Below are positions 1 to 28,600 of a stretch of 64,000 bases of DNA, piece after piece. The notes under the pieces were generated by a model. The model saw only the letters and a program-made list of their open reading frames with translations. It was not told the origin of the DNA and did not search any database. The DNA comes from Selaginella moellendorffii (lineage: Eukaryota > Plantae > Lycopodiophyta). How positions within the stretch are numbered: position 1 is the stretch's first letter; the number at the start of each line of letters is the position of its first letter. The translations under genes and the position numbers were made by a program. The stretch spans positions 915,035-979,034 of the forward strand of contig NW_003314270.1 of assembly GCF_000143415.4 (NCBI RefSeq), given 5' to 3'.

Positions 1-156
1 AATCTTTTTATTCGGCTATGCGATTCGCAGCTGCACAAATATCAATAGAAGTGTGGTAATCTACCGCACTCAACAAACAAGGGTCCATCACACAGACAAT
101 AAATCCCATTTCTTTAAATTCCCTCTCAAGGGTCTTGACAACCTAATTCTATTTCC

Positions 157-178
157 ACACATACACACACACACACAC
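157..178. repeat. (CA)n microsatellite
   Basis: Imperfect CA dinucleotide run (cacacatacacacacacacaca). Confidence 0.85.
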
Positions 179-6750: not shown

Positions 6751-7299
6751 GCACAATATAACACCCCCCTTTATTTAGGGTGTATATGGACTTGCATGCT
6801 ACCTCATTCCTCATATAAGCATGCCATCTCATTACAATAAATTCTAGTATATTATTTTTCAATTATTTTTTAGTATTTAAAGGTACAAAATAAAGTATAC
6901 TTTTTATTCTACTATAAAAATATTCTGATTGTGTAGCTTAATATGACTACATAGAATATTAAATGCAATTTTTTTTGCTAATTATATTCTTGAAAGTAAA
7001 AGCTGTATAATCCTTTTGCTGTACCATAGAAAGGAAGGGATCTTTTCAATGTATTCTATGTTGATTCAATAGAATTTTTATGAACTTTAGTCACAGAATC
7101 AACAAAATTTTGGGAGTGATTAACTATATAATTAAGTTCAATTGATTCAATCACTTTGAATCATAACTACCCCAACAATCACTATATATAATTGTTCCCA
7201 AAATATTAATTATAATTATTAAATAATAATAATAATAGAAATAGAACTTATCTAGTTAAAAATATGTATATAATATATCAATTAGAGTTTTTGCAATAC

Positions 7300-10200
7300 A
7301 ATCAGCCACTAAACTATAAACATTTATCTAAATCATGTTTGATTCCCCTAAAGACCCATTGGCCTTCTACACTTCTACCATGATTATATTTCCGCTTACC
7401 AAACTTACTTTCATCAATTTCCACAATTTTTTCTGGACCATTAATCTTTTGACTACCTTGTTGTAATGTGATAACACAAATATCATGGCAAAATTTGTAC
7501 TAATTTGTTGTCATATACTCACTTTTAATACTACATTCAATACAAGCTTGATCTTGTAGCATTTTAATGCACCAATAATATAACACTCTAAGCTTTTGAG
7601 CAAATGTGAGATTGATATTTATATACTAAGTATTAGTTCTAAGAGATTTTGTGGTATTGCAATTTTTACAATTCCACTTCAAACCATCTTTACAACCTTG
7701 GTTGTTAAATCAATATCTCATTAGTCATAGCATCTTTCACATTCTCTCTCTTCTAGAAGAAGATCAACTGTAATACAAAAACCTTACTATAAATTCTCTC
7801 AATAAGATTAGAAAAAGAAAGAATACTATCTTGAGCATGTTCTATATATTCCAATCTAATCATAATACTAAAGAGAATGAATAAAATAAGAAAGAAAATA
7901 TAACAAGGAACACAAACATAAAACACAATGAGAAAAAACCTAAACCAAGCATATAAACTATATGTGTTATATTCACTCAATAATCATTTTAACACTATAA
8001 AACTATACTTTTGTAAAAAAAAAAAGACAAAGTGAAACAAAAATGAAATAAATGGAAAAGATATAAGGGATTATAAGATAAGGTTTAAAGTCATATTTGA
8101 TATAATTGCACTGCAACCAATCCATATCAAGAATAAGGTTAAAACCTTAACTTGATACCCCTTCTTCTACTCAAATGACATATTCTTATGTAACAATTGT
8201 GTCAAGGAATAGCCACCTTTGCAAATTTACATAAGAAATACTAAAAGTAACTAGCTATATGAAGGAAATTACATAACTTGGCTATTGAAGCTTGTGTAGG
8301 TTAATTCTCCACCATAGCCACACTCCTTAGATTTATCTTAACATCTGTGGATATTACAATATAGCATAAATACTTTACATTCAACTTTGCAAATTTACAT
8401 TTGCTCTTCTTTGCATAAAGTTTACTATCATGTAATAACAAAAGAATCTTGCATTAATGCTCCTCTAGCTTCTTACTTATAACAAGAATATCATCAAAGA
8501 AAACCTCTAAAAACTTATAAAATAATGTCTCATCAACCAAGTAGATGGAATTATAGTATTTATCAATCTAAATAGTATAACTATGAGCTCAGAATGCCTA
8601 AAGCTCACTGTATTGGAGATATATATATCATCTATTGCAATTTGATAGTATTCACTCTTTGAATCAGTTTTAGTAAACACTTGAGCTTCATTAACATTAT
8701 CTAAGATATCATCAATATATGGCATTTATATTTTATCTTTAACCATTTTTTAAAAATCATATTAGTCAATATATATCCACATTAAGCTAATTTTGTTTTC
8801 ATGAGCAAGGCCAGTGTGTCAAATCGAAACTTATTTGGCTTAATAAACTCAAATTTAAGTAACTCCTTAACTTGTCATTAGACTTTTTACTCCTCCATAT
8901 AGTTTAGTAAAAAAAAATATTAGTAAATTGGCTTTGTTGTTAGCTTTAGCATAATCTTATATCCCATATCTCATAATAAAGGCAATCTATAAATTTGGAA
9001 AGAAAGATATCAATAAATTCCTTAAGTACATCTTGTATTATTACTTTTCCCTCCCATGTGCTTTGTATAAACTTCTGAATTTAGATTTCTCATGAGTTCA
9101 TTCAACTTAATACTAATCAAACCCAAAGATATATAATCTCAAGTATCCTAAAACCCTTAACTAATTAGAAAAGAAGCTGATCTTTTATTTATAAGCCTTT
9201 TCTTTCTATATTTGAATTTTTATGAATCCATCTCTTAAATTGTTCTTTTTAATTGTTTATAATCTACTACACTTCTTTGCAAATTCACGCCCTCATAAAT
9301 GGAAATTAAGAGCTATAGCTCTCTAAAGGGATTTATTCTTTTAACACCCCACCCTTTATAAATTGAGTTTAGCTGAAGTAAATTAACATATAGTGTGATT
9401 TCTTTAACCAATTAATAAAGTCAAACCAAAGACCCCTTTAATACCATATGTAAACTTATAAATTTGGACTTCTCAAAAAATCACATCTAAACTACTATTC
9501 AAACCCAAGGATGTATCTTAAAACTCTTAAGTGATTAAAAAAAGGATGCATTTTTATTCATATATTTAAACTCTTGTGAATTGTCTTTTGAATTGTTTTT
9601 TTCAGCTATTTACGCTGTCATCCTTCTGCATAAATAATAATTAACTTAAAAATATCTATTTATTACCAAAAGCTTGTTTTAAAGATATAATAGAAAGTAT
9701 AATAATTGGAGGCTAAACTCTCTTTCTAAACCACACATCTTAATCCACTATACTTAGGGATCCNNNNNNNNNNNNNNNNNNNNNNNNNNNNNNNNNNNNN
9801 NNNNNNNNNNNNNNNNNNNNNNNNNNNNNNNNNNNNNNNNNNNNNNNNNNNNNNNNNNNNNNNAAAATGAACTTCACACAATGGATTTTTGTGAGAAAAA
9901 AAACTTTACAAATGTGGTTTTGTTATCTAACACTTCTTGAAATATTGGGTAAAGGTAGTCACACCTTCATTGTATATAGAAGAATCATGTCATTAAGTCA
10001 TGCTCTTCACAAACTTTACGAAAACAAAGTTGTAATCACTCTAATTGTTTAGTAAAATTTGTATTTGATTGCTATAGAACACATTCTCTAACATTAAAAT
10101 TGATGCACAAGTGTTTTTAGCCTCTATTTTATCCCACACATAATTTAGTTGACCATCAACAATTTATAATTGCTTCCTTTGACCAAATCAATCCTCCTCA

Positions 10201-10860
10201 TCATCCTAATATCATAAATTCTACAACTTAATATTCAACTTACTATTATTAAAAGATTAATCATTTTTCTTGCTTTGTTATTTATTCTTCATCTATGGAT
10301 AAATAAATTTATAATGTCCAAACTAGCCATAATAATGATAATTTTACTTTTAGTTCTTCATAAAGAACATCTACTTTTTCAACCCCTTTATTTCTAAAGT
10401 AGTTATTATAAATTTCAACTTGTGATATTTATTTCCATCTTCATATTCATAATAATTGTTATAACAATTTTTTGACTAAAGTACTCCTCAAATGCTTGTG
10501 AGGCTTATGCTTGTTATTGTCAAGTCAACAAACCACATCAAATAACTTTTAATGATGCAAGTATTGCCTTCACTTTGAAGGCCATTTTAATATAAAACAT
10601 AGCTAAAATTAAATGAATAAGTTTCTCAATGTAGTCTCTAAATGTCATTTTTCCTTGTTGAAGTTCCACAAAAGCATTTTTCATAGTTAAAGTTCCATGA
10701 GAGCATTTTTCATAGTGAAAGATAAAACATAAATGAAAAACAACTTCAAACTCATCTATAATAAATATTAGTAGTTTTCTATTTGCAATAGAAGATTCCA
10801 CCATCGGATACCTGCATAATACAAAACTATTAACCATTAAAGCTTTTGCATTTAAAGTTC
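7300..10860 (-). mobile_element. Highly degenerate Ty3/gypsy LTR retrotransposon (gag-pol relic)
   Basis: gag-like ELQQGKMTFRDYIEKL (10538-10837). RT-like MPYIDDILDNVNEAQVFTKTDSKSEYYQI (8507-8725), then FFDDILVIS and LYAKKSKCKFA..VKYL (about 8330-8500). gag lies upstream of RT on the minus strand. LTRs were not resolved. Confidence 0.75.
9764..9863. other. Assembly gap (100 N)
   Basis: Run of exactly 100 N, probably a placeholder length. Confidence 0.99.
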
Positions 10861-10944
10861 CTTTGGTAATGTTGCCATCACTGAAAAATTGAAAACTTAA
10901 GTCAATCCACCAAATTAATCTTGTTTAGAGTACTACCAACACGC

Positions 10945-11240
10945 TCATGCATCATAGCAATCATGCCATGCATCTCCTCTTAAGAAGCAATATTTGGGTA
11001 ACTCTGTGATCAAGCGCCTATCCAGCAAGCCCACGTCCATAATCCGTGTAATAAGCACGCTCAAGTTTGCTAGCGGAGCCGAGTCTAGAAGTTTCAACAG
11101 CTGTTTGCCACTCCAGTAAAGCATACCTCCGCCCTCTGCCATTCATACAGCTTTTGTTGAGCAAGGCCAACGAGAAAGAATGCGTCCCTGCATAGTGCTC
11201 CACAAGCTTGGAATTCTCGAGCATACCAGCCAAGCACGGA
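10945..11240 (-). pseudogene. Possible degenerate PPR (PLS-type) gene fragment
   Basis: Frameshifted pieces AGMLENSKLV, MNGRGRRYALLEW and SVLIT..DVGLLD loosely resemble PPR repeat consensus. Confidence 0.3.
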
Positions 11241-11429
11241 AAGCTTGCTTGTGAAAGTTTCTAGCTCCTCACTGAGAATTCACAGCTCAAAGTTTCAATC
11301 GCAAACGAACTCACAGTTTTCAATCTCGTACCTTAGTGACTGTGCACAAAGACATCAGTGCGCCGATAGTACTCGTTTGTCAGCGCGGAAAATCAATAAA
11401 CAACGAGCTCAGCAGTAGAGGCATCCCAT

Positions 11430-14400
11430 TTAAAGCGAGCTCCTCAAAACTCTGGCAATTGCGCGAGAAACAAGCTTGTTTGTAACTTCTAAAGGCACCA
11501 ACAATAGCTTTTGTTGCAAGGGAAGTGGGAGCTGCAAACGGACACGAATAAGTTTTCTAGTATCTACACGAATAATCTGATACCTTCACAAGGACCGAGA
11601 ACCATTTTAGAAACTCGCTCGAGTCGCCCAACAGTGAAAGAAACTCCGGAGTTCTCGTGACGAGGCTTGTGCTCGTGCGATCATACTTCTGCAAATTTCA
11701 TATAGTCGCATTTTAGATCTTTAGCTATAAAAAAGAAATACCAGAAGCTTGGAGGAGCTATCAGAAGTTGAAGTTATCAAGGCCAATATGCGAACAAGGT
11801 TGATGAGATTTTCCTCGTCTTGGGCGTCGACTAGTCCCTGGATTGATAACCCCAAGCTTGAGATCAATCTCTCAATTGTGGAACGATTTAGAGCATCTAT
11901 TCCCTGCAAAACCGAGTGAAACAGCTTTCTTGTTTTTAGACTAGTTTTTACCTTGACAACTTCGTCGAGAAGGACACCTTTCACGTATTCACCCTGCAAT
12001 ATGAAGATCTCAAGAAAAGCCCAAGAAGCTTTGACGATACCTGGTCGCTAAGTATAAAAGTATACAATCGATTCTGGAGTGCCTCGGTAGTAGCTTGATC
12101 TAGTGACCAGTTTGCAGTGGCTTTTGAAGACTATGTAAACCATCACTTGGTAAGAGTAACCAAAACAGAATCAAAATGCTCTCATTAACGCACCTCAAGT
12201 ATTAGAGATTCTAGACGATCGATTTGAAATGTACCATCCTGCGAGGAGAAAAACCAGCTCATATTATGATTGAATGAATGCGTTCGATTGTTCCTACCTT
12301 GTATAACAGATTGTAAAGAGTTGATCTAAGCGTTGGCGAATCATCAGTCAAAACTTTCCTAGCTATCCAAGGGTAAGAGCGTCCCAAAACCTTGTAGTTT
12401 GGATCGATGGTAATGGCTATTCCTTCCAACACCGTTAAACTGGAAAAAGCAAAGATAAAAATCATTCTCAATGTAGTTTTCCTTGCCTTCGAATCACGAG
12501 AGAAAAGTATGATGGTATCCTGAATTTAAACTTGAACCTGGACAACACAGACCAGTGACATAAAGAAGAAAAATAGACGCTTACATAGTTTGTCCAAGCT
12601 TTCCTGAAAGATCTCCAAAGCTGAGATTGGTAACACCCCTACTAACCGCATTTTCAAAAATTCCTGATGAATAAACACTCCTTTTGTAAGAAAATAAAAA
12701 CTGAAAAGAAATATCCTGAAAAAAAAAAAGAAACGTGACTCACCTGTAAGTGCACGGCTCACTTCCGCTGATGGAGCTGTGGGAGGAAGAAATCTAAACA
12801 CGAAACACGAACACTTAAGTTGGTTTTTGCCAGGTAATTACTTTCTAGACATACCCGAGATTAACGATATCTCCTGCCAGTGCATCAAACTCCCGATTTA
12901 CAAGGTGCAAAGAGGCCTCAACTATAGCATCTCTAAAATTTTGCTTGATTTCACCCATCATCCCAAAGTCTGCCTAGCAAAAAAAAATACACAGATGAAA
13001 GAATTTTTCCGAGTAAATGTGAATGAAAGTACGTACCAATATAAGCTAGTTTACCATCAGTCGTACACAAAAGGTTGCCCGGATGAGGATCAGCGTGGTA
13101 AAAACCTGTTTCTAAAATTTGTGACAATGAACAATACGTTCCAATCTGTGCCAAAACCTGAGTCATAAGAAAGCTCTAAAACAAAAAGCTTTCTACCTCT
13201 ACGAGTCGAAGATCTTTGGCTTCTGATAACTTCTGTCCCTACACAGGCACCAAAAAAATAGCTAACGTTATAAACTTTAAGCGTTAGCATACCTCAACCC
13301 ATTCCATGATCAACACTCGCTGGCTGGAGAGTTCCTTGTACATCTTCGGGATTGTAAGATCGGGGATATCTCCAAACAAACGCCTGCCAACACACAAAAG
13401 TTACACGGAAGCTCGAAAAGAAAAATCCAAGGGAGAATCACCTGAATCTCTCTCCATTTCGTGCTTCAGCTTCATAGTCCATTTCCTTCGAAAAAAAACA
13501 CAAGAAAGAAAGCAAGTAAAGCGTGAAACAATGCAATGAACTCACTCTAAAGAGACTACTGGCCCATTCGTCTACAACAGCCTGCAAGGCAAGAAAACGA
13601 AGAACGGGATCAAGACAAGAATCACGATACTATCAAGTACCTGCAAATCTGTGTTAAATCTTCCAACAATTCTAGCATAGCCAGCCAAAATTCTAAGTAT
13701 ATAAATGTCCAAAGATATGGTTGCTTTCACCCCTGGCCTTTGCACCTTGACAGCAACAGTGTCACCACTTGGTCGAAGTCGAGCTTGATAAACCTGCGAG
13801 ATTTTTCCAGAGTAGAACGTTTAAAACCACGCGGACGAGAAAATAAGATGTAGTAAAAAGTAAATCTTCTTGCCTGGCCAAGGGATGCTGCTGCAACAGG
13901 CGCGGGAGTGATTTCCGAGAACAAGACATCAACTGGAACACCGAGCTCCGACTCGATGATGCTCAAAGCGGCTTTGGTCGAGAATGGTGCGATCTGGTCT
14001 TGAAGGAGAGAAAGCTCGGCGATGTACGCTGGTGGAATTAAATCCTGACGACCTCCTCATGAAAAGAGAAAACAGAAAAACAAAAACAAAAACAGACCAA
14101 AACGGAAAAAAATAAAAATAAAAAGTAAAAAGCGAGAGCTGTAAGTTTTGACAACGATGACTTAGTGAGAGTTTTTGAGCTTTGAGAAGCTTACTGGACG
14201 TGAAGACACTGCTTGTGCGATCTTTACAAAAGCCTGAGAGTTTAAGTAACGTTACAAATGGCATATAGAGGAAAAAACGAAAGCTTACCGGCCCAAGCTC
14301 TACTAGTGCCTCCCGAAACTCAGCAGCGCGTTTCTAAAAAAATAAAAAGTAGTTTTAAACATTATAAAAAAAAAAATCGAAAAAAAAGAAGACAAGAAAG

Positions 14401-15305: not shown

Positions 15306-18300
15306 TCAAGCTTCCAAGCTCTCACAAACTTGTCCTAGCAAGCTCCTGTTCTTCCCGGCTATGGCTTCCCCTTGTTCCACCAAAACTTCCCCAGCGACAA
15401 TCCTCACAGTTCCACTCCTCCTCTTCACCACCCCCTCGATCCACTGCTCCATCCACCTCTCAAACCTCCGGCTCCCATCCATCTCCTCCCACACAAACCC
15501 CATCATCATCTCCACCACCCTCACGTCCACCTTCACACAAACTCCATAGCTCCCAGCCATCCTCTCCAATCTCTCCATCACAATCTCTCCCGTGGACTCC
15601 ACCTCAAACTCCCGGAAGCAAACCACCTCATCAAAGTGACCACCACCATCTTCACACTCCAAGGAGGAACACCCGAGTCCCAAGTTTAAGTCTAGTCCAG
15701 CCACCTTGCTCCTCCTAGTTCCACTCGGATCGAGCAAGCACGCCAGCTTCTCCCCCCATCTCACTCGCGACTTTCTCTTCTCGCCAACGATGGCAGCTTC
15801 TCCATCGCCAACCAAAACTATCTCCTCCTCGCCACTTTGCTTGAACTGGATTACTGAAACCATGCTGTTCTTCGTTTCTTCCACCTCCATCTCGCTGCCA
15901 GTAGCAGTAACTTCTTGCTCGTCCACCACCACTCGGATCTCCCGCGGCTCAACACCTTCGAGCCTCTCTTCTAGGCCCGATCTCGCCTCCTCGCCCGCGC
16001 TCGTCGCCACCAAAGTCACCGTGTTTCCAAAGCTCACTTCTCTCCCGCTCGAGTGCTGGATCTTCCCTCGCTCGATGCAGCCGAGCACCGCCGCCTTGAC
16101 ACCAGCGTCCGCCTTGTCAAACTCCTCGAGCAAGAACACCGAGAATGGATTGAGCTTCACCGCGTCGGCTATCCTGTCCGTGACAGTCCGACCCCGGCTG
16201 CTCAAGCCATCCTGCTGCTCGGCCTCGGACTCCCACGCACTCTTGCGGCTCCTCCTCCTCCGCGGATTCAAGCTTATCAAAACCAGCCTGCCATCGTTGT
16301 AGAGCTCCGCAAGAGCCTTCGCCATCTTTCTCTTTCCCATCACGTCCGGCCCCGTGAGCAGCAGCCATGCATCGCCTTTCACGTTGGATCCTCGCTTCCG
16401 GTCCCCGGCTCTACACTGGGAAACCGTGGAAGCGATCTTACCAGCAGCGTCACTTTGCCACGGGACTCTCTCGCAGAGTTTCTTGTGTAGGCTCTTGAAA
16501 GACACCGCTGCGTCGATTTCCACACTCCTGATCTTGGACGCGTCTACCGAGCTCTGCTTGCACCCGCTTGTGTCCTGGAGCCTCTCGTGGTGAGACTCGA
16601 GAAGAACGCTCGGTGTGCCAAGCGCTAGTTCAGTCGTGACTTTGGAAGCTTTGGTGATGTTCTTGGCTGGCTTGTCAACCGAGCTGCCGAGTCCGAGAGA
16701 CAAAGCCGGACCGCTTGAGTCCCTCAATTCGGTAACTGTCGAGAGCGATAGCCAGTTGGAGGACGTCGCTTTGGCACTGGCGAGGCCTGGCTTGGTACTC
16801 AAGTCGAGGCCCCTGGAAGCTTGCTGGATCTTCCCGTTTGGACTCGAAGTCTGGCTCGAGGAAGAGTTGCTGTCGATCAAGTTTGGCAACGATGGCAGAC
16901 AGCTCTTGGAATGCATAAGTTGGCAGTATCGGCTCCACTTCTTTCGGAGCTCTCGCGTGAGTTGCGTGGGTTCCTGCGTTTCCAAGAGAAACAGCAAGTT
17001 AGCCAAGAACTTTTCATGGCTAGTTTACGTACCTGTGGTGTGATCGGCTTGGAGGTGATTGTGTGATTGTTTCTCGTCATCCAAAACGGGAGGCCTTCGA
17101 CTCCGGAGCTCGACTGCACAGACTCCGTCTTGGATTGACGCTCCTGGAGCAGCACAAGGCTCTCGTGCTCGAGCTTGGCAGTGCACTCGACGCAGCAGCG
17201 TACATCCTCGAAGTTATGGTGCTCGTCTGGTAGCTTGAACAGCATCTTTGGGAAGCGGGGAAAGGACTGTTCGTGTTTCTCGACGAGTGAAAACCTGCGA
17301 AAAGTTTGTCTCCAATTGTCAGAGTAGTGATCAACCAGCAAAGCTCATGCCAGACAACATTCACGAGAAAAAGCCAAATAAGATAAAAAGAAAAAGAACG
17401 AACTCGAAGGTTGACACACGGAACAGGAAAAATGCCCAATGGAAAACATAAAAAAAATAAAAACAAAAGCACGCAAACACGGAGGAACAGAAAGTTGACA
17501 AATGTAGCACTCAAAAACAATATGAAAAAATTGGTGAAAAAGCAGAAACACATGCCAAATCAAAGCGGAAAAGATATATCCAAGCAAACCATGGCAAAAC
17601 GAAGACGAAGAAAAAAGCTATATCCAATAAAACCATGGCAAAACGAAGAAGAAGAAAAAAGCTATATCCAATAAAACCATGGCAAAACAAAGAAGAAGAC
17701 GCTATGGAAAAACAAAGAAGAACATCCAATAAAACCATGGAAAAACAAAGAAGATGAAGCAGCTATGGAAAACAAAGAAGAAGAAGCTACATCCAATGAA
17801 ACCATGAAGAAGAAGCTATGGAAAATCAAAGAAGAAGAAGCTATATCCAATAAAACCATGGAAAAAGAAGAAGAGGAAGAAGCTATGGAACAACAAAAGA
17901 GAAAAGAAGAAGAAAATGCTATGGCAAATCAAAGAAAGAAGCTATGGCAAAACAAAGAAGATCAAGTAGCTATGGTGGCAAAACATAGAAGAAGCTATGG
18001 AAATCCAAACAAGATGAAGACCATGAAAGAAAAAGCTAGTCTCTATCAAAGAAACGCTAAACTTTACCTTGGACGTATAGATGGAATGGAGTTCGTGGAG
18101 ATGGGCAATGGCTGGAATCCCAGCCCACTCTCCATCGCTGGGTACTGCGCTAGAAACCTCATGTAGCACTGGCTACTCGCGGTAGCGATCAACCAGAGCT
18201 TACTCTCGGCCCTGTCCAGGATCTTCGCGAGATCGCCCATCACCGCATTCGCCATAGCCGACACCTCCACGCACCACGCCAAGCTCCCCAGCACCGCCAC

Positions 18301-19176
18301 CACTCGCCCACACTCCTCCACCGCCGCCGAGATCTCCACCAGCGAGCGCTGCGTCGCGTCCTTGGAGAACCCAAATCCGCGCTCCACGAACAGGATCCTC
18401 GCGTCGCGCAGCTCGCGATCGCCCTCGATCCGCGAGACGAGCTCCTTGAGCACCGAATTCGCGGCTCCATCGTCGCCCAGGAGCACTGGATTGCGCTTGC
18501 GCCGCCTGGAGAGCGTGGCGATGGCGGCGTCGGCCTCCCTGGAGCTGGAGCTGGGCTTCTCGATCGAGCACGGCCCAAGGCCAGTACGGAAGGTCTCGCC
18601 AATTTCGGCCAGGGGTGGTACGGGCTGGTGGCGATGGAGCGCCGCCTCGAGGCTGTTCTTCGCGCGGGTGCTCGAGAATCCGGCCTCGCGCATCACCCGG
18701 CTCACGCTCGGATCGTCTAGAATCGAGATGACGAGCTGCTCCATCTCCACTTTCACGGCTAGCAGCGGCACTTGCTGCTGCTCGGGGCATCCGCGGCGCT
18801 GGTGCGCTTGCGCGCGCTTGAGCGCCGCCACCAGCGCGTTGGACAGCGTCGCGATCGATTGTCCGCCGCTGGAGGAGAGATTGCCGCTGTCCGCCGAGGA
18901 GGAATTCTGGGCGTTGGCCGCGGGCAATCGCTCCAGCGCGACATTGAAGCACAGCTCCAGCGCGCGGCAATGCAGTGGATGCGGCGCCTGGCGGTGCGAT
19001 TGGATGCAAGCGTGCTGGAGCATCCCGGCCGGGGACGCGATGAGGCTGGCCGCGACGTGGAGTGGAGTGACCTGGGAGTGCCCGCGGCGCTGGGCATCAC
19101 CGATCGCGCGCTTGAGCACCGCCGCTGCGTCGGATGTGAGCGTCTGCTGCACCGTCGCGATCCCAGCTCCTCTCAT
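15306..19176 (-). CDS. SMXL: SMAX1-like (SMXL) Clp-N/ATPase-like repressor of karrikin/strigolactone signalling, about 1012 aa, 3 exons
   Basis: Exons 19176-18068, 17294-17033 and 16973-15306 join in frame with GT-AG introns. N-terminus MRGAG..VQQTLT..AA.VL..A...AQRRGHSQVTPLHVA and LSNALVAALKRAQAHQRRG. D2 P-loop GPDVMGKR, degron-like RGRT and EAR motif LDLNL. Confidence 0.96.
17560..18050. repeat. Degenerate ~40-45 bp minisatellite with GAA tracts in SMXL intron 1
   Basis: Repeated unit gctatatccaataaaaccatggcaaaacgaagaagaagaaaaaa and variants. Confidence 0.9.
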
Positions 19177-19215
19177 ATCTCCTCCCCGAGATCGAATTCC
19201 TCCCTCCCTCGACTC

Positions 19216-19248
<33 letters not shown>

Positions 19249-19251
19249 TCT
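19216..19251. repeat. (CT)n/(GA)n microsatellite in the SMXL 5' leader
   Basis: Long ct run about 40-75 nt upstream of the SMXL ATG. Confidence 0.9.
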
Positions 19252-22188
19252 CTTGTTCTTGCAAGAACAGCTAACTATTCAAATCGACGGTTCATGCGCT
19301 GCGATCGCTCGCCTTTCCAATTCTCTGCGATCCACGCCTTTTCTAGCGCAGCAATCCAGCGGTCTTCCGGCTCGACGCTACTTTTCTTCGCGCGCGACGC
19401 TTGGCGCGCCATAGGAAACCATCGACATCTTCGTCCCGGGCGCCAAGTGGAATCCCTGACTCCAATGCGCGCCCAAAGCCCGCCTGACGCTATCGATCCC
19501 TTGTGTGCTCGCGCGCTCACGATCTAGCGCTGTGGCGTCTGGCCAATTTCTAGAGATCCATCGCTAGAGCAACAGGACAAACGCGGCATCATCATCGCAA
19601 GCTCCGGCCTCTTCTTTCAGCGCGAATTGCAGCATCATCTACTCCAGCTAGCGGCCGCTGCCAAGGATTCTACGCCCCAGCCGCGCGCATTGACAATCCC
19701 GAAATTCCCCTTTTTCCCCTCGCTCTCACTCACTCGCGCGCTTGGCAAGAGAACAAAACACTCTTTGAGAGATCACGAAAATTCAAGGGAGCCATGGGGC
19801 CGGCCGTACCCCTTCTTTCCCCCTTTCGTACCGGTCAACAGTCGAGCGCTGGGAGTTCCGCCCCGGAATGTCCGAATCGATGGACGACAAGGGCCGCGGG
19901 GCTTCGGAATGATCCAACGGAGGGCCACCGCGGACCACAGCCCTCTTTGACTGGACCTTTCGCTTTCTTTTTCCCCCCCCAGTTGGACGGTCCAGGAGGC
20001 GCCACCTGGACGGCTGCCAAGCGTCGCCCTCCAGCTATAACTTCTCCTCGCGAGAAGGCTTTTTGGTTCTCCTCATTCTTTCTGGCTGTCGGTGTGTTGG
20101 GCTGTTTTTTTCGCACTTCCCTTCCTTTTTTCGTTTGGCCGAGCAAATAATGCCCTAAAGGTAGCTCCATCATTGTAAAAAGTCCTGCCAATTATCAAAT
20201 CAAATTATTACGCTAAATCCGCTTTGTGAATTTAACGAAAAACAAGCTCCGCCCTCGTGAAATACACCCAATGCGTTATTAAAGCATATAAATGATTGTT
20301 TTTATTCGAAAAGAAGCCAAGGCTTTTGTAAAAGGTGGTGGGGCTTCTTTCCCTTTCACTTTCCTCTGAAAGCCCTTTTACCTTTACCCAATGCTTTGAC
20401 ACGTCGGCCGGGGTGTGCGCCAGAGTGGCCGCCACGCGGCCACTGACGTGGCAGGGCATATTCTCTGGCGACAAAAAATAAACTTTTAGGTCAGGCTTGT
20501 CCCTCTCGCTTGTAGTGTTTTGCAGGAAGGTGGGTTCATCATGGCACCATTCAACCTCAACCTCAACACTGGGCCAAAGGCTGCAACCACGTCCCTCTCC
20601 CGGCTTTTTCCACAAAGAGAGAAAAAAGGAATTTTTCGAGAGACGCGCAGAAAGAAAATTTTAATAAAAAAGGTTTCACACTGACCAAAGAGATAGAAAA
20701 GCCTGCCATGAAAATGTGTTGTTAGATCTTGTTTCTGTGCTGTTCAAGGCTGTATTGGATTGCGCCCTGTTCTCGCTCTGTTGCATTGCACACGTTGAGT
20801 GTAGCCAAAGATCATCCAGGGAAATAGACCTCCTGGAATTATTTTATTTCTAGAAATAATTTCTGGGAATTAGTAAAGTATGGCTGGCGAGATCTATCTC
20901 GCCCTCAAAACTCCGAATACTGTCACCGTGCCTGCTTGGAAAGCAAAGTTTTATCATATATGCGATCACTTGCTATTTCTATAAAGTTTTCACATTATTA
21001 CTTGGTTTCTCTATTATTGCGCTCTGGTCTGTGGATTTCATCATGAGGGCTCAGGACAATTCTACGTTTTTCTAAGTGTTTTTGAGTATTTCTACATAAG
21101 ATATACGTAAAATATATTGGTATAGTATCTAACAGGGCTGATTCCCTCCTGGCGCACCAGAGCCGTCTAAACAAACAAATGCAGACAGTGCACCGTCGAT
21201 TCGGCTCCCGCCCAAAAGTTCCAACAGAGAACTTTTGAGTATTAAGTTGCAAGGAAGAAGATTCCGGCATATCCGCCCCATTTGTTGTCTCTTCTTCCTC
21301 TCTCCATGCAGCCTTTTGGTGCGCGAATGAGACCTGTGTGATAGCTCAAAGGCCCTTTCTTTTTTTTTTCCTCTCAAAGTGCGCTGGCATTGCGATAGGG
21401 AGATTGATATTTTCTCCACGACACCTTTTTGATAGATGTATTTGGCTATGGTTAGAAAAGAGTTTGATTTTTCTAGAGTCAAGGTCGAGACGAATCTAGA
21501 TCGAGCACAATAAACGCCTTGGAGAGAATTCGAATGGAAAGACTACACGGAGAAAGGTGGCGAGAGAAAGGTGGTGGCCAGGTGTGGTCCACAAGTCACA
21601 AGCGGCCACCAGACCGCGTGTCCTTGTGTACGTCCGTGGCCGCAATTTTCAAAGCCTTTGAAAAGCTTCCAAATCGGCCGAGATGAATGCCCCGCGCCCC
21701 TTTCTTTTCTCGGCGCAAAAGCAGCGAATCTTTGGGCCTTGAAATCGATCGATCCACGGAGATTCCCTGCTTTTGGTGTTTTTTTGTATTATAGACCAGC
21801 CTTTTAGCTTTGCAGTGCAAGAAAGAAAATAAATTCATATATTTTTTCTTCTCTAGAAAACAAGAGGAGAAAAGGCGTTTCCACACAAAACACTATAATT
21901 CGAGAGATGCTATTGCCACTGAGATCTGGACAAGAAAGCTGTGGAGAAAACCTTTTGAAACAAAGGTACCCTGGGACTGGAAAAAAGGATTTGACGTTTA
22001 AAGGGCTACAATGGAATGCATTGGAATACGTACTTCTATCAAGATTCGCCTTTAAAGTCCTAAAGGTGGTGCCTCAATGGAAGGATATGGATTGCCCTAA
22101 AATCTAGTGACCTAAAATCACCAAGCCCTAGAACGCAGGCGATGCGCGCTAGAATGTGGAGGTAGGGCTCGATCGATCGCGGTCTCGC

Positions 22189-24000
22189 ATGGATCTAGGT
22201 ATGGACGCTCACCGGAGCAGCAGCGCCGTGGCCGGCGCCAGCGGCGCCAGCAGCTATGGCGCGCAATTCCTCTTCAACCTCAATCTCTTCCCGCGATCGC
22301 TGTCGACCGTGCTCGAGGTCTCCGGATTGATCCCTGGCAGGTCTCACTCCTCCTCGCAGCTGGATTCCGGGAGCTTAGTCCGCAGTAGTGGTAGCAGCGA
22401 TAGATTAGTCGGCGGTGGGGGTGGTGGTGGCAGCGGCGAGGTAGCGATTAGAATTATCGGCGAGGACGAGGAGATTAGAATAGCGCCGAGCTCTTCCTCT
22501 TCTTCTTCCTCTTCTAGAGGATTGAGTGGAGAGAATGGCTCGAGTACTTCGTTAGTGATAGGTGGTGGTGATGAGGAGCTGGGTGGTTCTCCACGATTCA
22601 ACGTTGGTGGAGAGGTTGCCGGTGGTGATCCTAGTTCCAGGGAGGCGCCCGCTGCGACGACTACCACTACGCAAAGATATGACTTCCAGCCACTTGCGAG
22701 ATGGTTGGAAAACGTATTGCCTTTTACGGTCCTTTTGCTCTTCGTTTTCATTCGTCAACATCTGGAAGGTATAGCGGTCACGGTTGGTCTCACTGCCGTG
22801 ATGATCAGAGCGAATGTTGTTCTTCGCAGGCAAACAGCACTGAAGGTACAAGAGATTGATATCTTGCCTCGCAATCGGAGCCTAATGGCTTTTCATTTTC
22901 GTTTTTCTTCTTTGTTGCACAGGGTGAACGGAAGAAACTTATGACAGCGGCTGTGGGCATCGTGTTGGTATGTCATATAGTTCTAGTGTATTCGTGGTAT
23001 ACCAGCGAGGCCATTTGGAAGCCATTGCTGCTGCTTCCGCCGCGGAAGATTCCAAAGTTTTGGGAGGCCATTTTCACAATCGTGGTGAATGGTATGTTTC
23101 GAGCTGGCTTAGATTTCTTTCTTTTCTCACTGTCATCCCTCCGCTCGCAGATGTAATGGTGCGGCAGGCGGGAATGGCTGTCAAGTGCGTGCTTCTTTTG
23201 ACATGTAAGAGCACCAGGGGGCGTCATTTTCGCAAACAGGTTGGATAGCTATCCCACTTCCATGCAGCTTTTTTTTATTTTCGACCTTTTCTAATCTCAA
23301 GGTCTGTCAATTCTTCCAGGGCCAACTCCTAACAGCGGTGGAGTATCTTTTGCTCCTGGTCCGAGCTTTGATACCCGGACCAGTTTGGTACCGGTTCTTT
23401 CTCAACAAAGAGTACGGCAACGTGTTCTCCTCGCTGACAACGGGTCTATACCTCACTTTCAAGTTAACTTCAGTGTTCTCGAAGGTAAAATGACTTGAGA
23501 TTTGGGATTGTCTCTTTCTTTGGCTGAAGGCTCGTGCGTGGTTCCAGGTACGAGAGTTTATCGGGGCAGTGGGTCTTGTCACTCGTTGCGAAGTACAATA
23601 CGGGAGCGCTGCCAGTTCGGATGAGGTTTGTCGTTTGTATCTTCTACGAACGAAACTCTGGAAAAGGCCTTCACGCGTGGTATCTTTTTTGTTTTCTTTC
23701 ATCGGCAGGTCCTTGCAGCCGGGGACATGTGTGCGATTTGCCAGGAGAAGATGCATTCCCCGATATCTCTCCGGTGCAAGCATATATTTTGCGAGGACTG
23801 CGTTTCGGAATGGTAAGGGCTAGGCTTTTGTTTTTTTCTTGCTCGTTTGAATCGTTATGTGACAGAACTGAGGCTCTTTTGTTTGATGTTACAGGTTTGA
23901 AAGAGAGAGAACTTGCCCCCTGTGCCGAGCAGTGGTCAAGTCCGCAAACTTTCGATCATTCGCGGATGGCAGAACCAGCCTCCTCCCTCAAATTTTCTAA
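22189..24000 (+). CDS. RING finger and transmembrane domain protein (RNFT1/2-like E3 ligase), multi-exon
   Basis: Ser/Gly-rich N-terminus. TM region [30 protein letters not shown]3HC4 [32 protein letters not shown]|[11 protein letters not shown]. End ..[11 protein letters not shown] (TAA at 23998-24000). Confidence 0.93.
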
Positions 24001-24094
24001 CGTATGTAAATATCAAATCATATTTTCTAATCGTGCACGCTACTGTCGTTCGTGGCAGCGAATCCAAAACTCTGATTGGGGGCTTTGGCACGAA

Positions 24095-24942
24095 TCAAAC
24101 GAGCTTTAGCATTGAGACTGGGATCAAACACAAGCCTTGCTCTTGTAAATTGCATCGCCACTTGGACTCGAATATCTGCGAGACGAGTGGACAAATCTCT
24201 AGCGGAGGTTTGCAATTGATTTGTTTACCTGGATTTTCCTCTGCAAAAAGTGTACGTATTCGATCGCTTTGTCCAACATTTCTTCGTTGTGAAACTAAAC
24301 AAGAGAGAGATTTTTTGGCTATGAGATTTTTTTTGATCTCGCCTACCTTGTTTCCGTCTGGTATCAATCGCCGAAGAACACGGAGTTGCCTTTCAATGGC
24401 CTCGAAAGCTCCTTAAAATTTTTTGAGACACAAAAAAAATGAAAGAAATGGAAGTGAGGACGAAAATAGATAAAACAATGGTTCTTCCATCTTGAAACCA
24501 CAAAGGAATAACTTACATTGTCAATCTCTGATTCGTTGTCTTCGTTAAATAATGACTTGAGTATGTTCTCTCCAGCCTGTGATGAAGCAAATAAATGCCA
24601 GAAAAACGAGGAAAAAAAAAAGCAACTTGCTCTTACTTGTTCTTGCGATCGATGATCCGTGAGTGGCCCCGAGGAGGCGTCCGAAAGCACCGAGAGCGTG
24701 GAATCCTGGCGAGCGAGCGATCTCTTTTGCGGCCTTCGAGCTTGTGGTTCTTGGACTCGAGGAGACAATGACAATGGCTGCTGATCCAAGTAAGTCGTCC
24801 ACCCCGACTCCTCCGCCTCCTCGCCGCCATTGCTCCGCTCCTCCTCCGCCGCCACCACCACCACCGAGCCTCTGGATTGCTCCTCCACCACCGTGCTCTG
24901 CAAAGATTCGCGCGATTCCATCCTCCGCCGCTTGCATCCCAT
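24095..24942 (-). CDS. SOFL/VUP-motif protein followed by an atypical (non-basic) helix-loop-helix domain and a GLCLxP tail
   Basis: ATG at 24942. Exon 1 has EESGWTTYL and SVLSDASSGP. Downstream exons ~24411-24347, 24294-24229 and 24175-24095 read AFEAIERQLRVLRRLIPDGNK|FHNEEMLDKAIEYVHFLQRKIQ|IFESKWRCNLQEQGLCLIPVSMLKLV*. The phase of the intron 2 junction is ambiguous. Confidence 0.75.
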
Positions 24943-25636
24943 GGGAATTGGAGAGGAAGTGGAGTGGAATGGAGAGAGAGATAACGTTCTCTCCAAAAAG
25001 AGGAGAGAAAAAGAGAGAAGAGAATGGAAATATGATACGAAGATATCAGCCAAATGTGGAGCTGCCCTCGCAGCACCTTTACAGTGGGTTTCTAGTGTCA
25101 CACTGACGGCGGGGTAAAAGTAGAAAAGTAGAAAACAAAAATCTCGTTGGTAAAATATCAATGGCGGTAATACGGTCGTTGTTTTTACCACTGGTTACCT
25201 TGTCGGTAGAAGTTGCAGTTGGAGGGGAGGGGCTTGTCGGGAAGAGACATTGATTCTTCCGTCACTGCTCCCCAGAAAGAGGCAGGTCGCGCATAGCGCG
25301 CGTTTCTCATTGGCCGGCCGGAAGTACAAACAAAGGCTTGTTTGGCGCCTCATGGCCGCCCATCCCACCGTACGGACGGGTGTGGTCCACCCGCCAGGCA
25401 TGGCCGTTTATGACACGAGAACCGTACGGAAAATTTGTTGATAGGGGGAAAAAAAAATTTCTATGATACATCGCGCTGTACACAAAAACAAGGGAAAATG
25501 GGGAGAGCAAAAAAAAAAACCAAAAAGAACGAGGCCGAGTTACTTACACTCCTTTCTTCGATCGTTCTTTCCTTTTTTTCCTAGTTTTTGTTCTTCCTCC
25601 TCTTTTTTTCTTTTTGGTTTCTTCACGCGTGTTTGT

Positions 25637-28600
25637 TTAGCCTTTGATCGCCTCGGCGCTCAAGCTCGCGTTGATCTCCTCGTCCGTCGGCTTCGCCGGT
25701 GGTCCCATGCAAGATCTCGCGACCGATTCAAACAGCCTGTCGATCTCCGGAGCGCATCGCACGAATGCGTGGTTCCAAAAGTTGTAGCGGGGATTCTGCG
25801 CGAGATAAAGGGAGCGTGGTGAGAGATATTTCCAACGAAAAGGAGAAAGAAGAAAGGAGGGACAAAGATCTCCCCCATACCTTGATTAGCTCGATGAAAG
25901 TGATGAGCAGACCCCACGGATGAGGACGGTTGACGATGAGCCTTTCCAGCAAAACTCTCGTGATTTGCTCTTGGATGATCTCCTGCTTTGAAGCAAAGCG
26001 CAAGGATTGAGCTAGAGCCTACATAAAAGAGCACAAAAGGAAAGCTTACCTGGCTGGCTTCGGCGAACAAGTAGAGCAACACGCACGAGAAGTAATGCGT
26101 ATGGTTGTTTGGATAGCGGAGCTGGTTGGCGATGGCGTTGAGGAACAAGTAGCGGCCCTCGGTATCAAGCTCTACAATCAGCTTCTGGAATATGTCCATG
26201 GGAGCGCTGTGCGTGATAGGCGCGGTCGGGACACCGATTTGAGGGGCGGTCTTAGCCTGTAGCTGTTGGATTGCCTGCAAAAAGAATGGCGTAATGCCTC
26301 GTCACGGCAGTAAGTAGCATTCGCATACCTGCATTCCCACATAGAGCACCAGCGAGTTTATCAGAGGGACGTTGTACCGCGTTCCACTCAATCCGGATTC
26401 GTGCTGTGACAATAGCAGCCGCTGCTTCAAATCGACAAGAAACAAGGGTGGTGACAGGCGCGTCTGCAAATGAAGAGCACGTTATATTGTGCACTCTGAC
26501 GAAACAAGCTCACACACCTTCAAATACTCGTCAACGTCACCCTTGAGTTGCTTGCTTTTCAAGGCAGCTTCCACATCAGACAGTATGCGAGGAGGATGGC
26601 TTATTTCCGGCAACAAATCGACCTGCGCAAATACCATTGTCACAAAGACGTCAACAACAATGCACGGAATACCTTCAAGTTTGGAGTAAATGGATCTGGC
26701 AGTCGCATATTTCGTGGGAATGCGCTCAGTATGAGATTACGCATTTGAATACAGCTCGGGGGAATGACGTCGCAGAAGCTGAAATGATAATCGCAGAGGA
26801 ACTCTGGGAAGTCGTGGAGGAGCACAAGCAACACGCGTAAAGTGCCTTTGTACAGCAGCCTGATCTGTAAAAGTTTAAACCGACAAATGAGTCTGGGTGC
26901 TAGACATCGTGGTCCAAGCTTACCGGGTCACTGAGTTCCGCACTTCTCAAGTAGGGGTCCATAAATCTGAAAAGCGATACAAGGAGGCGTTGAAAATTCG
27001 GCCAGCCTTTCGGTTGCTGAACTAAAAGTTGCTTCGGCATAAAGGTACGATGACTAATCAACTCCAACCACACAAAGCTGCAAGAGAGACAGCAAATTAA
27101 ACAAACCACAGAGGTATTATATACCACACCTCCATCCCGGCGTGTTCAGGGGTTGCAACATCGTGAGGGCATTGGTGAAGGAAAGAAGAATCTGTTCCAA
27201 TCCATGAAATCAATTGAAGTGGACCAAAAGCACGTACCTGATAAACGCTAGAATCCAATGATGGGTCTGGCGCATTAAAATCCATGAGCCATGTTAGAAA
27301 CAAGCGGAAGTAAGGACGCGGCTGAAACGAAGTTTTCTTCTCGTCAGCGTCCTTTTGAATCACGCGCACAGTCACGTTCAAAACCTGATACAAATACCAA
27401 GCATAAGGAACAGCAGCTGGGACAAAACATCAATCACGAACTCTGTTAAGAAGGCCGACTTTATTTGCTGTTGATTCCGCCGCATAAAACTGCATGAGCC
27501 AATATTGTTTGAGATAGTCCATGGTTAAGATTCTTCAACTCTACCTTCACAAGGAGCACAACAAGTTTGGCGTACAAATCAACGGCCGCAAAATTTAAAG
27601 TGCCAATAGGAGAGGATTCCACAGAAAGCGAATGCGCCACAGCTAGCTCCTGCGCACATTAAAGTCAAAAGACGGAAAATAGAAAAGGCTGTGCAACATA
27701 CAGTAAGAATTCTGAAAAATTGATCCGTCACATCATCGCCTTTGAGGAAACCAGATTGCGTAAGTTGAGATATAAAATTTGCATATGTTTTATCATTAGC
27801 GCCTGGGGTATTGCACACCCGAGCCCATTCATCGAACAGGAGGGCAATCTACACAAAAAGACAAGCATCAATCAAGTAGGAAGAAGAGGAAAGACGAAGT
27901 CACCTGATCACGAAGTCCAACCGGATCAGTGTCGCGAGGAATAGGTTTAACATCATCTTTCACAGGCCGACTTACAGGTCCGGGTGGTTCCGTCGGTAAA
28001 GTTGGTCCAGGCAAAATGTTGGGGACGTGGAGCTGCGTACCAATAAGAGAACAGAGAAAAGCATGAGTAACAAATGTGTCTGACCATTTTCGTACCTTTA
28101 GAAGCTCTGCGCCACTTCCATCTGGAAGTAAAGCAGAAGTTCCATCACTTGACAATACTTCTTGATGTCGGGCTCCTCCGTCAGGAAAACTGCATAGACT
28201 AATGAGCCTTTAAACACCGGTAGCGTGTCAAAAGGTACCTTGTTGGCGACTGGGTGCGAACATCCACTTCGTCAGCATTGACATCCGACGCTTGCGTAAT
28301 AGCGGTAGAAGTATGAGAAGGAAATACGTTCGGATAATTTGGGCGAGTGCTTGCAGCTGAGGCTTGTGTTTGCCATGGCAGACGAGCGAAATCCTGAGCA
28401 CACATCAAAAGCAATTACATTGACATGGAGAAAAGAAAAACACAATACCTCAAAAACACGTTGTTGAGCGGGTGACAATCTACCAGCTTTGGGTCGAAGA
28501 GACTCAGGTAACCTTGAAAGATTCCCTTGAGTGTATGCTTGATGAACAACATCCCTTTGTGTTCTTCTAGCTATCAAAATAGGTGCCATGGAATCCTCAA

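What the first reader, a model, noticed from the sequence alone, without database searches (positions are those of the whole stretch)
24095..24942. SOFL/VUP-motif gene with a hidden helix-loop-helix domain: possible link between VUP/SOFL proteins and bHLH factors
Seen: exon 1 encodes EESGWTTYL and SVLSDASSGP. Three small downstream exons, not joined in the ORF track, encode AIERQLRVLRRLIPDGNK|FHNEEMLDKAIEYVHFLQRKIQ|..LQEQGLCLIPVS. Phase-0 introns fall after the loop Lys and after helix 2, flanking a 66-nt exon, the usual plant bHLH layout, and there is no basic region. Known: SGWTxY and SDASS are the signature motifs of SOB-FIVE-LIKE and VASCULAR-RELATED UNKNOWN PROTEIN families, which have no recognised fold. 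LxxxGLCLVP ends both VUP1-type proteins and subfamily X bHLHs. Inference: VUP/SOFL proteins may derive from a bHLH by loss of the HLH, and this protein may be a non-DNA-binding HLH antagonist that keeps the ancestral architecture. I cannot confirm it is undescribed.
Basis: partly seen in the sequence, partly recalled or inferred. Interest (0 to 1): 0.85.

Follow-up and report, generated by a model that had tools for sequence, protein, structure and literature searches.

The report
SOFL-motif HLH gene, frameshifted allele
This Selaginella gene belongs to an old vascular-plant family that joins the SOFL growth-regulator motifs to a helix-loop-helix domain with no DNA-binding basic region, but the copy in this window has a one-base splice-site shift, so its observed transcripts lose the HLH part.

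Summary
This is Selaginella moellendorffii LOC9632831 / SELMODRAFT_408741, a five-exon minus-strand gene. UniProt already names its product "BHLH domain-containing".

RNA-derived contigs join all the exons. The ancestral acceptor would start exon 3 at 24412. It is intact in the allelic scaffold GL377615.1 and gives a 66-nt phase-0 exon there and in Diphasiastrum. In this window it is mutated (AG to AA at 24413).

This allele's transcripts therefore use the AG one base downstream. The frame shifts and stops at 24366-24364, giving 137 aa with SOFL motifs but no HLH. The in-frame joints in the reads carry the other haplotype's SNPs.

At family level the idea holds:
- Lycophyte and gymnosperm relatives combine SGWTxYL, SxxSDASS, a basic-less HLH and a GLCLxP tail.
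- The HLH scores hhalign 98% against bHLHs and E 7e-7 against MYC2.
- The tail is hit by Pfam VUP_C.
- Angiosperm SOFL5/6 proteins match the N-terminal part and end within or before helix 1/loop.

The link to VUP proper and to bHLH subfamily X was only indirectly testable. The scan found this family before on other DNA of this genome (s1-434236, s1-385075).

The parts
24637..24942 (-). Exon 1 (CDS start ATG 24942-24940; 102 aa). N-terminal part predicted disordered, carrying the SOFL motifs.
   Evidence: The e1/e2 joint is seen in 4 runs. AF2 pLDDT is below 50 for residues 1-45, 57-60, 62-81 and 94-100.
24787..24810 (-). SOFL-A motif ESGWTTYL (aa 45-52)
   Evidence: Invariant ESGWT.YL in family alignments A1 and A3. 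Fits SGWTxY as defined in PMC5873917.
24664..24693 (-). SOFL-B motif SVLSDASSGP (aa 84-93)
   Evidence: Invariant S..SDASSGP in A1. Fits SxxSDA / SMxSDASSxP of PMC5873917.
24577..24636 (-). Intron 1 (60 nt, GT..AG, phase 0)
   Evidence: Joint 24575->24636 (cut +1) in all 4 runs.
24517..24576 (-).
24412..24516 (-). Intron 2 as spliced in this allele (105 nt, GT..AG). It puts exon 3 out of frame. Intron-retaining contigs also exist.
   Evidence: Joint 24410->24516 (cut +1) in X2 and X3. X2 contig of 351 nt, matching exon 1 (189) + exon 2 (60) + exon 3 (65) + 37 nt of exon 4; the exon 1 piece listed shows 0 other letters. Retention is seen in X1 and X7.
24413..24413 (-). Mutated ancestral splice acceptor. 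A here (TTTTAA|GGAGC), G in the allelic haplotype (CTTTAG|GGAGC).
   Evidence: Alignment of L001 and L002. The 66-nt phase-0 exon 3 in Diphasiastrum shows the G state is ancestral.
24347..24411 (-). Exon 3 (65 nt here, 66 nt in the sister allele). Encodes helix 1 and loop (..AIERQLRVLRRLIPDGNK) in the ancestral frame.
24364..24366 (-). Premature TGA reached by the frame of this allele's observed transcripts (product 137 aa ending ..ELSRPLKGNSVFFGD)
24295..24346 (-). Intron 3 (52 nt, phase 0, after the loop Lys)
   Evidence: Joint in 4 runs. Same position in Diphasiastrum.
24229..24294 (-). Exon 4 (66 nt): end of loop plus helix 2 (FHNEEMLDKAIEYVHFLQRKIQ)
   Evidence: A 66-nt exon is also found in Diphasiastrum.
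24176..24228 (-). Intron 4 (53 nt, phase 0, after helix 2)
   Evidence: Joint in X1 and X2, short side 27 letters. Same position in Diphasiastrum.
24095..24175 (-). Exon 5: helix 2 extension, tail LQEQGLCLIPVSMLKLV (GLCLIP at 24136-24119), stop TGA 24097-24095
   Evidence: A tail-only HMM scores 33-43 bits in family members. Pfam VUP_C is precomputed on relatives P0004, P0007 and P0039, and faint on allele P0037.

Best explanation
Shown:
- The locus is one of the two allelic copies (scaffold GL377574.1) of a Selaginella moellendorffii gene.
- The ancestral product is a protein of about 190 aa. It has a disordered N-terminus with the SOFL-A (SGWTxYL) and SOFL-B (SxxSDASS) motifs, an acidic stretch where bHLH factors have their basic region, a genuine helix-loop-helix, and a short conserved GLCLxPxS tail of the Pfam VUP_C type.
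- The family occurs in lycophytes and gymnosperms.
- Angiosperm SOFL5/6 proteins are homologous to its N-terminal part and end within or before helix 1/loop.
- In this window a G-to-A change destroyed the intron-2 acceptor. The spliceosome uses the AG one base downstream, exon 3 is 65 instead of 66 nt, and this allele's observed transcripts are frameshifted. They would give a 137-aa SOFL-motif-only protein.
- The sister haplotype makes the full 192-aa protein.

Inferred:
- The intact protein cannot bind DNA. It would act through HLH dimerisation with bHLH partners, as Id, PRE, IBH1 and AIF proteins do.
- Angiosperm SOFLs arose from this type by loss of helix 2 and the tail.
For: Identity.

Splicing and alleles:
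- Joints and the two intron-2 forms.
- Acceptor SNP.
- The 104-nt-skip contig carries 4 other letters in exon 3, equal to the 4 SNPs of the other haplotype.
- Diphasiastrum has 66 + 66-nt phase-0 exons at the same positions.

HLH:
- Pfam HLH 16-18.5 bits in 4 family members, all on profile positions about 14-53.
- hhalign 98.2%, E 4.8e-14.
- PDB profile search finds MYC2 7e-7, Max 2e-6, MITF and Id1.
- The AF2 HLH has pLDDT 73-91.
- The top Foldseek rows are Max, SREBP and MYC2; the MYC2 row has rmsd 1.4 over 54 columns.
- Acidic residues align to the ERxRR positions.

Family:
-.
- SOFL5/6 matches reach profile positions 154-211 at most. Helix 1 is 185-201 and helix 2 is 206-227.
- AtSOFL5/6 are the intron-containing SOFLs.
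Against: - No in-frame transcript of this allele was seen, so this copy may be a null or truncated allele rather than an HLH protein.
- Contigs drop rare forms, so a minor in-frame splice cannot be excluded.
- Single-sequence Pfam HLH scores are below the gathering threshold.
- The helix-1 remnant in SOFL5/6 is weak on its own (hhalign P 0.008, probability 5%).
- No partner, dimer or DNA-binding assay exists.
- VUP proteins themselves could not be fetched.
Confidence: 0.75

Rival explanations
1. This window's allele still makes the full HLH protein. It would do so through a minor in-frame splice, either the acceptor at 24400 (JGI model, 181/188 aa) or a non-canonical GT..AA intron (NCBI model XP_024528641, 192 aa). 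The frameshifted form would then be an unproductive by-product.
For: - Both public gene models assume an in-frame join.
- Between the two haplotypes, helix 2 has 4 synonymous and 1 non-synonymous differences. The region after the shift has 9 synonymous and 6 non-synonymous. This suggests constraint until recently.
Against: - In four runs from four studies, the only spliced intron-2 joint attributable to this allele (X2, X3) is the 105-nt frameshifting one; X1 and X7 show this intron retained.
- No joint at 24400 was seen.
- The one 104-nt-skip contig whose pieces are listed (X3) carries the other haplotype's SNPs.
Confidence: 0.2
2. The direction of evolution is the reverse. A SOFL-like disordered protein is ancestral and gained HLH and tail exons by fusion in lycophytes and gymnosperms. 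Angiosperm SOFLs would never have had an HLH.
For: - No bryophyte or algal member of either form was found, so the root is not fixed.
- The helix-1 remnant is statistically weak.
Against: - The full architecture is present in both lycophytes and gymnosperms with identical intron positions.
- SOFL-only forms are reported from angiosperms only (PMC5873917).
- SOFL5/6 C-termini align in register with helix 1, the loop and the start of helix 2. An example is ..SSAPVKPTPARPVCRDE against ..SILPETPICREE.
- Pinus short forms stop right after helix 1.
Confidence: 0.1
3. The HLH resemblance is a chance match of an amphipathic or coiled-coil segment, and the gene is just a SOFL/VUP-type disordered protein.
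For: - Pfam HLH scores are below the curated cut-off for every single family member.
- Foldseek E-values are not significant.
Against: - The profile-profile comparison gives 98.2%.
- PDB hits are exclusively bHLH or Id proteins down to 7e-7.
- The best phmmer hits among 1.84 billion proteins are bHLHs.
- The three introns flank helix 1, the loop and helix 2, as in the commonest Arabidopsis bHLH pattern (PMC5531549).
Confidence: 0.03

Closest known systems
SOB FIVE-LIKE (SOFL) family, especially AtSOFL5 (AT4G33800) and AtSOFL6 (AT1G58460)
   Same: - Same SOFL-A SGWTxY and SOFL-B SxxSDA(SS) motifs in the same order, plus a shared DTASSP motif in gymnosperm members.
- A family profile retrieves proteins named SOFL5/6-like at E 1e-15 to 1e-7.
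- NCBI already names the Cryptomeria member 'SOB FIVE-LIKE 6'.
   Different: - This family carries helix 2 and a GLCLxP tail that SOFLs lack.
- It occurs in lycophytes and gymnosperms, whereas PMC5873917 reports no SOFL in Selaginella and SOFLs only in angiosperms.
VASCULAR-RELATED UNKNOWN PROTEIN family (VUP1; InterPro IPR039280; Pfam PF27761 VUP_C)
   Same: - Precomputed VUP_C hits lie on Ginkgo, Cryptomeria and Pinus-type relatives, with a faint hit on the sister allele.
- From my own memory, unverified: VUP1-type proteins carry the same N-terminal motif set.
   Different: - No VUP sequence could be fetched here, so it is untested whether VUPs keep or lack the HLH.
- The local Pfam copy lacks VUP_C.
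Non-DNA-binding HLH proteins (animal Id; plant PRE/KIDARI, IBH1, AIF)
   Same: - HLH without a basic region.
- Id1, Id2 and Id3 structures are among the PDB hits.
- The expected mode of action is titration of bHLH partners.
   Different: - Much longer disordered N-terminus with SOFL motifs.
- A conserved C-terminal tail.
- No evidence of orthology to any of these.
Canonical plant bHLHs: HEC/IND-like (nearest by HLH sequence) and subfamily X (bHLH111/112, nearest by Atlas cluster names)
   Same: - 40-53% identity over the HLH to HEC3-like proteins.
- Atlas neighbours named bHLH111-like and bHLH112-like carry VUP_C and weak HLH.
   Different: - No basic region.
- The Sphagnum HEC-like bHLH examined (genomic locus) is intronless, whereas this family has the three-intron layout; the Physcomitrium locus is a Logan contig that may be RNA-derived.
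- The tail resemblance of moss bHLHs is not significant.

Membership tests
bHLH superfamily (HLH fold, Pfam PF00010 clan) | Helix 1 - loop - helix 2 recognised by HLH profiles | tested here: met
   - Single sequences score 13.5-18.5 bits, below the gathering score of 20.7.
- The family profile gives hhalign 98.2%, E 4.8e-14 and MYC2 E 7e-7.
- AF2 predicts helices 123-138 and 147-178.
bHLH superfamily (DNA-binding members) | Basic region (ERxRR-type) N-terminal of helix 1 | tested here: not met
   - The positions aligned to MYC2 ERQRRE are acidic or neutral: family consensus e-k-d-e-a-d, here DNGAFE.
- Pfam matches start at profile position 14-20.
bHLH superfamily (plant genes) | Conserved intron pattern in the domain (three introns, phase 0, 66-nt helix-2 exon) | tested here: met
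   - The exon map is, and the same positions occur in Diphasiastrum.
- The three-intron pattern is stated as the commonest in Arabidopsis in PMC5531549.
- The exact positions in other bHLHs were not compared here.
SOFL | SOFL-A SGWTxY and SOFL-B SxxSDA in the N-terminal half | tested here: met
   aa 46-51 SGWTTY and aa 84-89 SVLSDA. The definitions come from PMC5873917.
SOFL | Sequence homology to named SOFL proteins beyond the motifs | tested here: met
   - Profile A1 finds about 100 angiosperm SOFL5/6-like proteins at E 1e-15 to 1e-7 against 5.8 billion sequences.
- The matches span profile positions about 35-205.
VUP (Pfam VUP_C, PF27761) | Match to the VUP_C model | tested here: inconclusive
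   - Precomputed hits exist on relatives P0004, P0007 and P0039, and only a faint hit on sister allele P0037.
- None is on record for P0001.
- The model is absent from the local Pfam copy: no hit for P0004 or P0007.
bHLH subfamily X (bHLH111/112 type) | Closest HLH and shared C-terminal LxxxGLCLVP motif | not testable with these tools
   - Only Atlas cluster names (bHLH111-like, bHLH112-like with VUP_C) point there.
- No subfamily X sequence could be fetched.
- The nearest HLHs by HMMER are HEC/IND-like.

The most novel reading that the evidence does not exclude
SOFL proteins, and probably VUP proteins, are plant growth regulators with no known biochemical activity. They may be degenerate descendants of a vascular-plant family of basic-less HLH proteins, and may still act on bHLH networks, for example by titrating cell-elongation bHLHs through the retained helix-1/tail remnants or through the SOFL motifs. 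The frameshifted Selaginella allele would be a natural, still segregating instance of the step that produced SOFL-only proteins.
Probability: 0.3. Interest if true: 0.7.

Novelty: new variant of a known kind. Interest (0 to 1): 0.55.

Why it matters
- SOFL and VUP overexpression changes cytokinin content, cell expansion and hormone responses, yet neither family has a known fold or mechanism. The SOFL review states that the family is angiosperm-only.
- A conserved older protein that carries the SOFL motifs together with a real HLH and the VUP_C tail gives both families an ancestry.
- It also gives a testable mechanism, HLH-type partner titration, and points to which partners to look for.
- The window adds an allele pair (intact and splice-shifted) in the reference plant that could serve as a natural test.
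- Databases already label these proteins bHLH-domain or SOFL6-like, and the scan reported the family twice before. The gain is therefore in the connection, not in a new kind of molecule.

Tried and rejected
- Exon 1 alone against 5.8 billion proteins gave nothing. The length window (56-178 aa) excluded the 192-aa product. A read-through reference then found it.
- I first read the 104-nt skip as a non-canonical TA..AG or GT..AA intron, or as wobble splicing. I rejected this once the allelic scaffold showed a canonical AG one base upstream and the contig's SNPs matched it.
- The 1-nt deletion at 24455 in an intron-retaining contig does not restore the frame usefully.
- The moss HEC-like bHLH tail (..KLCLVSISQ) as the source of the GLCLVP tail: a tail-only HMM gives E 0.1-1.6, not significant. 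The Sphagnum gene, read from a genome assembly, is intronless; the Physcomitrium locus is a Logan contig, so its contiguous ORF does not show that.
- Foldseek against PDB: the best rows are bHLHs, but no E is at or below 0.001, because most of the model is disordered.
- hhalign of the SOFL5/6 C-termini against the HLH gave the right register but only P 0.008.
- The VUP1 paper could not be read.
- No paper in the library links SOFL or VUP to HLH or names these loci.
- In one search the 70-aa spliced C-terminus was typed because it had no reference at that time. Later calls used P0001.

Full report
**What is there**

The stretch lies in Selaginella moellendorffii scaffold GL377574.1. Locus L001 equals the reverse complement of window 21095-27942. 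The gene is on the minus strand. NCBI annotates it as LOC9632831 (XP_024528641, P0001, 192 aa). JGI annotates it as SELMODRAFT_408741 (EFJ31208, P0002, 181 aa), which UniRef names 'BHLH domain-containing protein'.

My exon map from the sequence:

| Exon | Window coordinates | Notes |
|---|---|---|
| 1 | 24942-24637 | 102 aa |
| 3 | 24411-24347 | 65 nt in this allele |
| 4 | 24294-24229 | 66 nt |
| 5 | 24175-24095 | stop TGA at 24097-24095 |

Exon 1 holds ESGWTTYL and SVLSDASSGP.

**Transcripts**

Twenty public runs hold about half of the words of the stretch, as expected for spliced RNA. I laid four runs from four studies on 23400-25600.

- The e1/e2 and e3/e4 joints are in all four runs.
- The e4/e5 joint is in two runs, with a short side of only 27 letters.
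- Intron 2 shows three states:
  - a 105-nt GT..AG intron (24412-24516) in X2 and X3;
  - a 104-nt skip in X1 and X3;
  - retention in X1 and X7.

The 105-nt intron shifts the frame. The product would be 137 aa and would stop at 24366-24364. The 104-nt skip is in frame and gives exactly P0001 (..DNGAFEAIERQ..). On this DNA, however, it would need a TA..AG or GT..AA intron.

**The allele explanation**

P0001's 90% cluster holds a second protein, P0037 (SELMODRAFT_421134 / LOC9648155, 95% identical). It lies on scaffold GL377615.1 with the same neighbours, CNOT1 and a RING gene. That scaffold is therefore the other haplotype.

At the intron-2 acceptor the other haplotype reads CTTTAG|GGAGC. The window reads TTTTAAG|GAGC. 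The window's allele has lost the AG: window 24413 is A instead of G on the minus strand. It splices one base further on.

The one 104-nt-skip contig whose pieces are listed (X3) has 4 other letters in exon 3. These equal the 4 SNPs of the other haplotype at 24389, 24383, 24382 and 24356. It is therefore a transcript of the sister allele laid on this DNA.

The X2 contig with the 105-nt intron is 351 nt long, which fits exon 1 (189 nt) + exon 2 + exon 3 + 37 nt of exon 4. The exon 1 piece listed for it shows no other letters.

The Diphasiastrum orthologue has 66-nt and 66-nt phase-0 exons with the same boundaries. The 66-nt exon 3 is therefore ancestral and the window's 65-nt exon is derived.

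Between the haplotypes, helix 2 has 4 synonymous and 1 non-synonymous changes. The HLH was under constraint until recently. A minor rescuing splice in this allele cannot be excluded, because contigs drop rare forms.

**Is it an HLH?**

- Pfam HLH hits the spliced C-terminus at 18.1 bits. It hits P0001, P0003, P0004 and P0005 at 13.5-18.5 bits. All are below the 20.7 cut-off and all lie on profile positions about 14-53, meaning without the basic region.
- phmmer over 1.84 billion representatives finds 32 proteins at E up to 1e-3. Apart from family members these are bHLHs, mostly HEC3-like, at 40-53% identity over the HLH.
- A profile of 11 family C-termini (A4) against 22 of those bHLHs (A5) gives hhalign probability 98.2%, E 4.8e-14 over 50 columns.
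- The same profile against PDB sequences finds MYC2 (7e-7), Max (2e-6), MITF, TAL1 and Id1.
- In these alignments the ERxRR positions are occupied by acidic or neutral residues.
- AlphaFold2 with the 14-row alignment predicts helices 123-138 and 147-178 at pLDDT 73-91, and a disordered N-terminus.
- The best Foldseek rows are Max, SREBP and MYC2, though they are not significant. The MYC2 row has rmsd 1.4 over 54 columns.
- The Atlas model of the Cryptomeria relative matches HLH clusters at TM 0.60-0.66 by query.

**The family**

Ginkgo (P0003, P0004), Cryptomeria (P0007, named 'SOB FIVE-LIKE 6' by NCBI), Picea (P0170, 'BHLH domain-containing'), Pinus (P0175), Diphasiastrum (P0005/P0034) and several unnamed transcript products share the following:

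- SESGWTxYLDQS
- SMASDASSGP
- mostly a KRRR stretch and DTASSP
- the HLH
- LxxxGLCLxPxS

Pfam VUP_C (PF27761) is precomputed on P0004, P0007 and P0039, and faintly on P0037. The local Pfam copy lacks this model.

**Relation to SOFL**

The family profile finds 279 proteins. After the family itself come about 100 angiosperm proteins of 150-250 aa, many named SOB FIVE-LIKE 5 or 6.

- All have SGWT and SxxSDA, nearly all have DTASS, and none has the tail.
- Against a full-length profile their matches end between positions 154 and 211. Helix 1 is 185-201, the loop Lys is 204 and helix 2 is 206-227.
- Their C-termini (..QKHFGFLQSSLPGK.., and monocot ..SSAPVKPTPARPVCRDE) line up with helix 1, the loop and the first residues of helix 2.
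- Pinus short forms end at ..QSLLPME.
- On its own this remnant is weak (hhalign P 0.008).
- AtSOFL5 and AtSOFL6 are the SOFLs that still have introns.

The SOFL review found no SOFL in Selaginella and none outside angiosperms. That statement does not hold for the motifs and the N-terminal homology.

**What stays open**

- No VUP or subfamily X sequence could be fetched.
- The Sphagnum HEC-like bHLH, read from a genome assembly, is intronless. The Physcomitrium locus is a Logan contig that may be RNA-derived, so it does not show this. The tail-like ending of these moss proteins is not significant.
- I found no paper that links SOFL or VUP to HLH or names these loci.
- The scan had already reported this family twice on other pieces of this genome, with the same reading. 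My tests agree with those notes and add the broken acceptor of this allele.

**Mechanism**

Shown: an HLH without a basic region, a conserved tail, and a disordered motif-bearing N-terminus.

Inferred: the intact protein dimerises with bHLH factors and withholds them from DNA, as Id, PRE, IBH1 and AIF proteins do. This allele's product would lack that part.

Noticed in passing
window 23400-24290 (+ strand): A convergent RING-finger gene (455 aa, zf-C3HC4) lies here. RNA contigs run on to 24137, and unspliced contigs cover 24108-24286. Its 3' end therefore overlaps exons 4-5 of the SOFL-HLH gene in antisense. A GT..AG joint 24001->24059 lies in its 3' part.
   Followed up: partly
window 25637-27942 and beyond (- strand): A CNOT1 (CCR4-NOT scaffold, 1931 aa) gene lies directly upstream. 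The same neighbours flank the allelic copy on GL377615.1.
   Followed up: partly
window 24455 and 24511: An X1 contig that keeps intron 2 lacks one base at 24455. An X7 contig that keeps intron 2 has the other haplotype's base at 24511 but this haplotype's bases elsewhere. More alleles or recombinants exist than the two assembled.
   Followed up: no
L003 (Physcomitrium, P0153) and L005 (Sphagnum, P0023): Moss HEC-like bHLHs of about 510-520 aa end in ..LFKQKLCLVSISQ, which looks like the GLCLVPxS tail. A tail-only HMM gives E 0.1-1.6, which is not significant.
   Followed up: yes
P0045, P0047 (Pinus) and P0055, P0062, P0081 (palms): Short SOFL-type proteins end exactly after helix 1 (..QSLLPME) or after a loop-like ..PVKPTPARPVCRDE. 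This is near the position of the intron that follows the loop in the full-length genes.
   Followed up: partly
window 1-12000 and 18001-20000: The first 12 kb are AT-rich (26-38% GC), and 18-20 kb reach 62% GC, against about 45-50% elsewhere.
   Followed up: no
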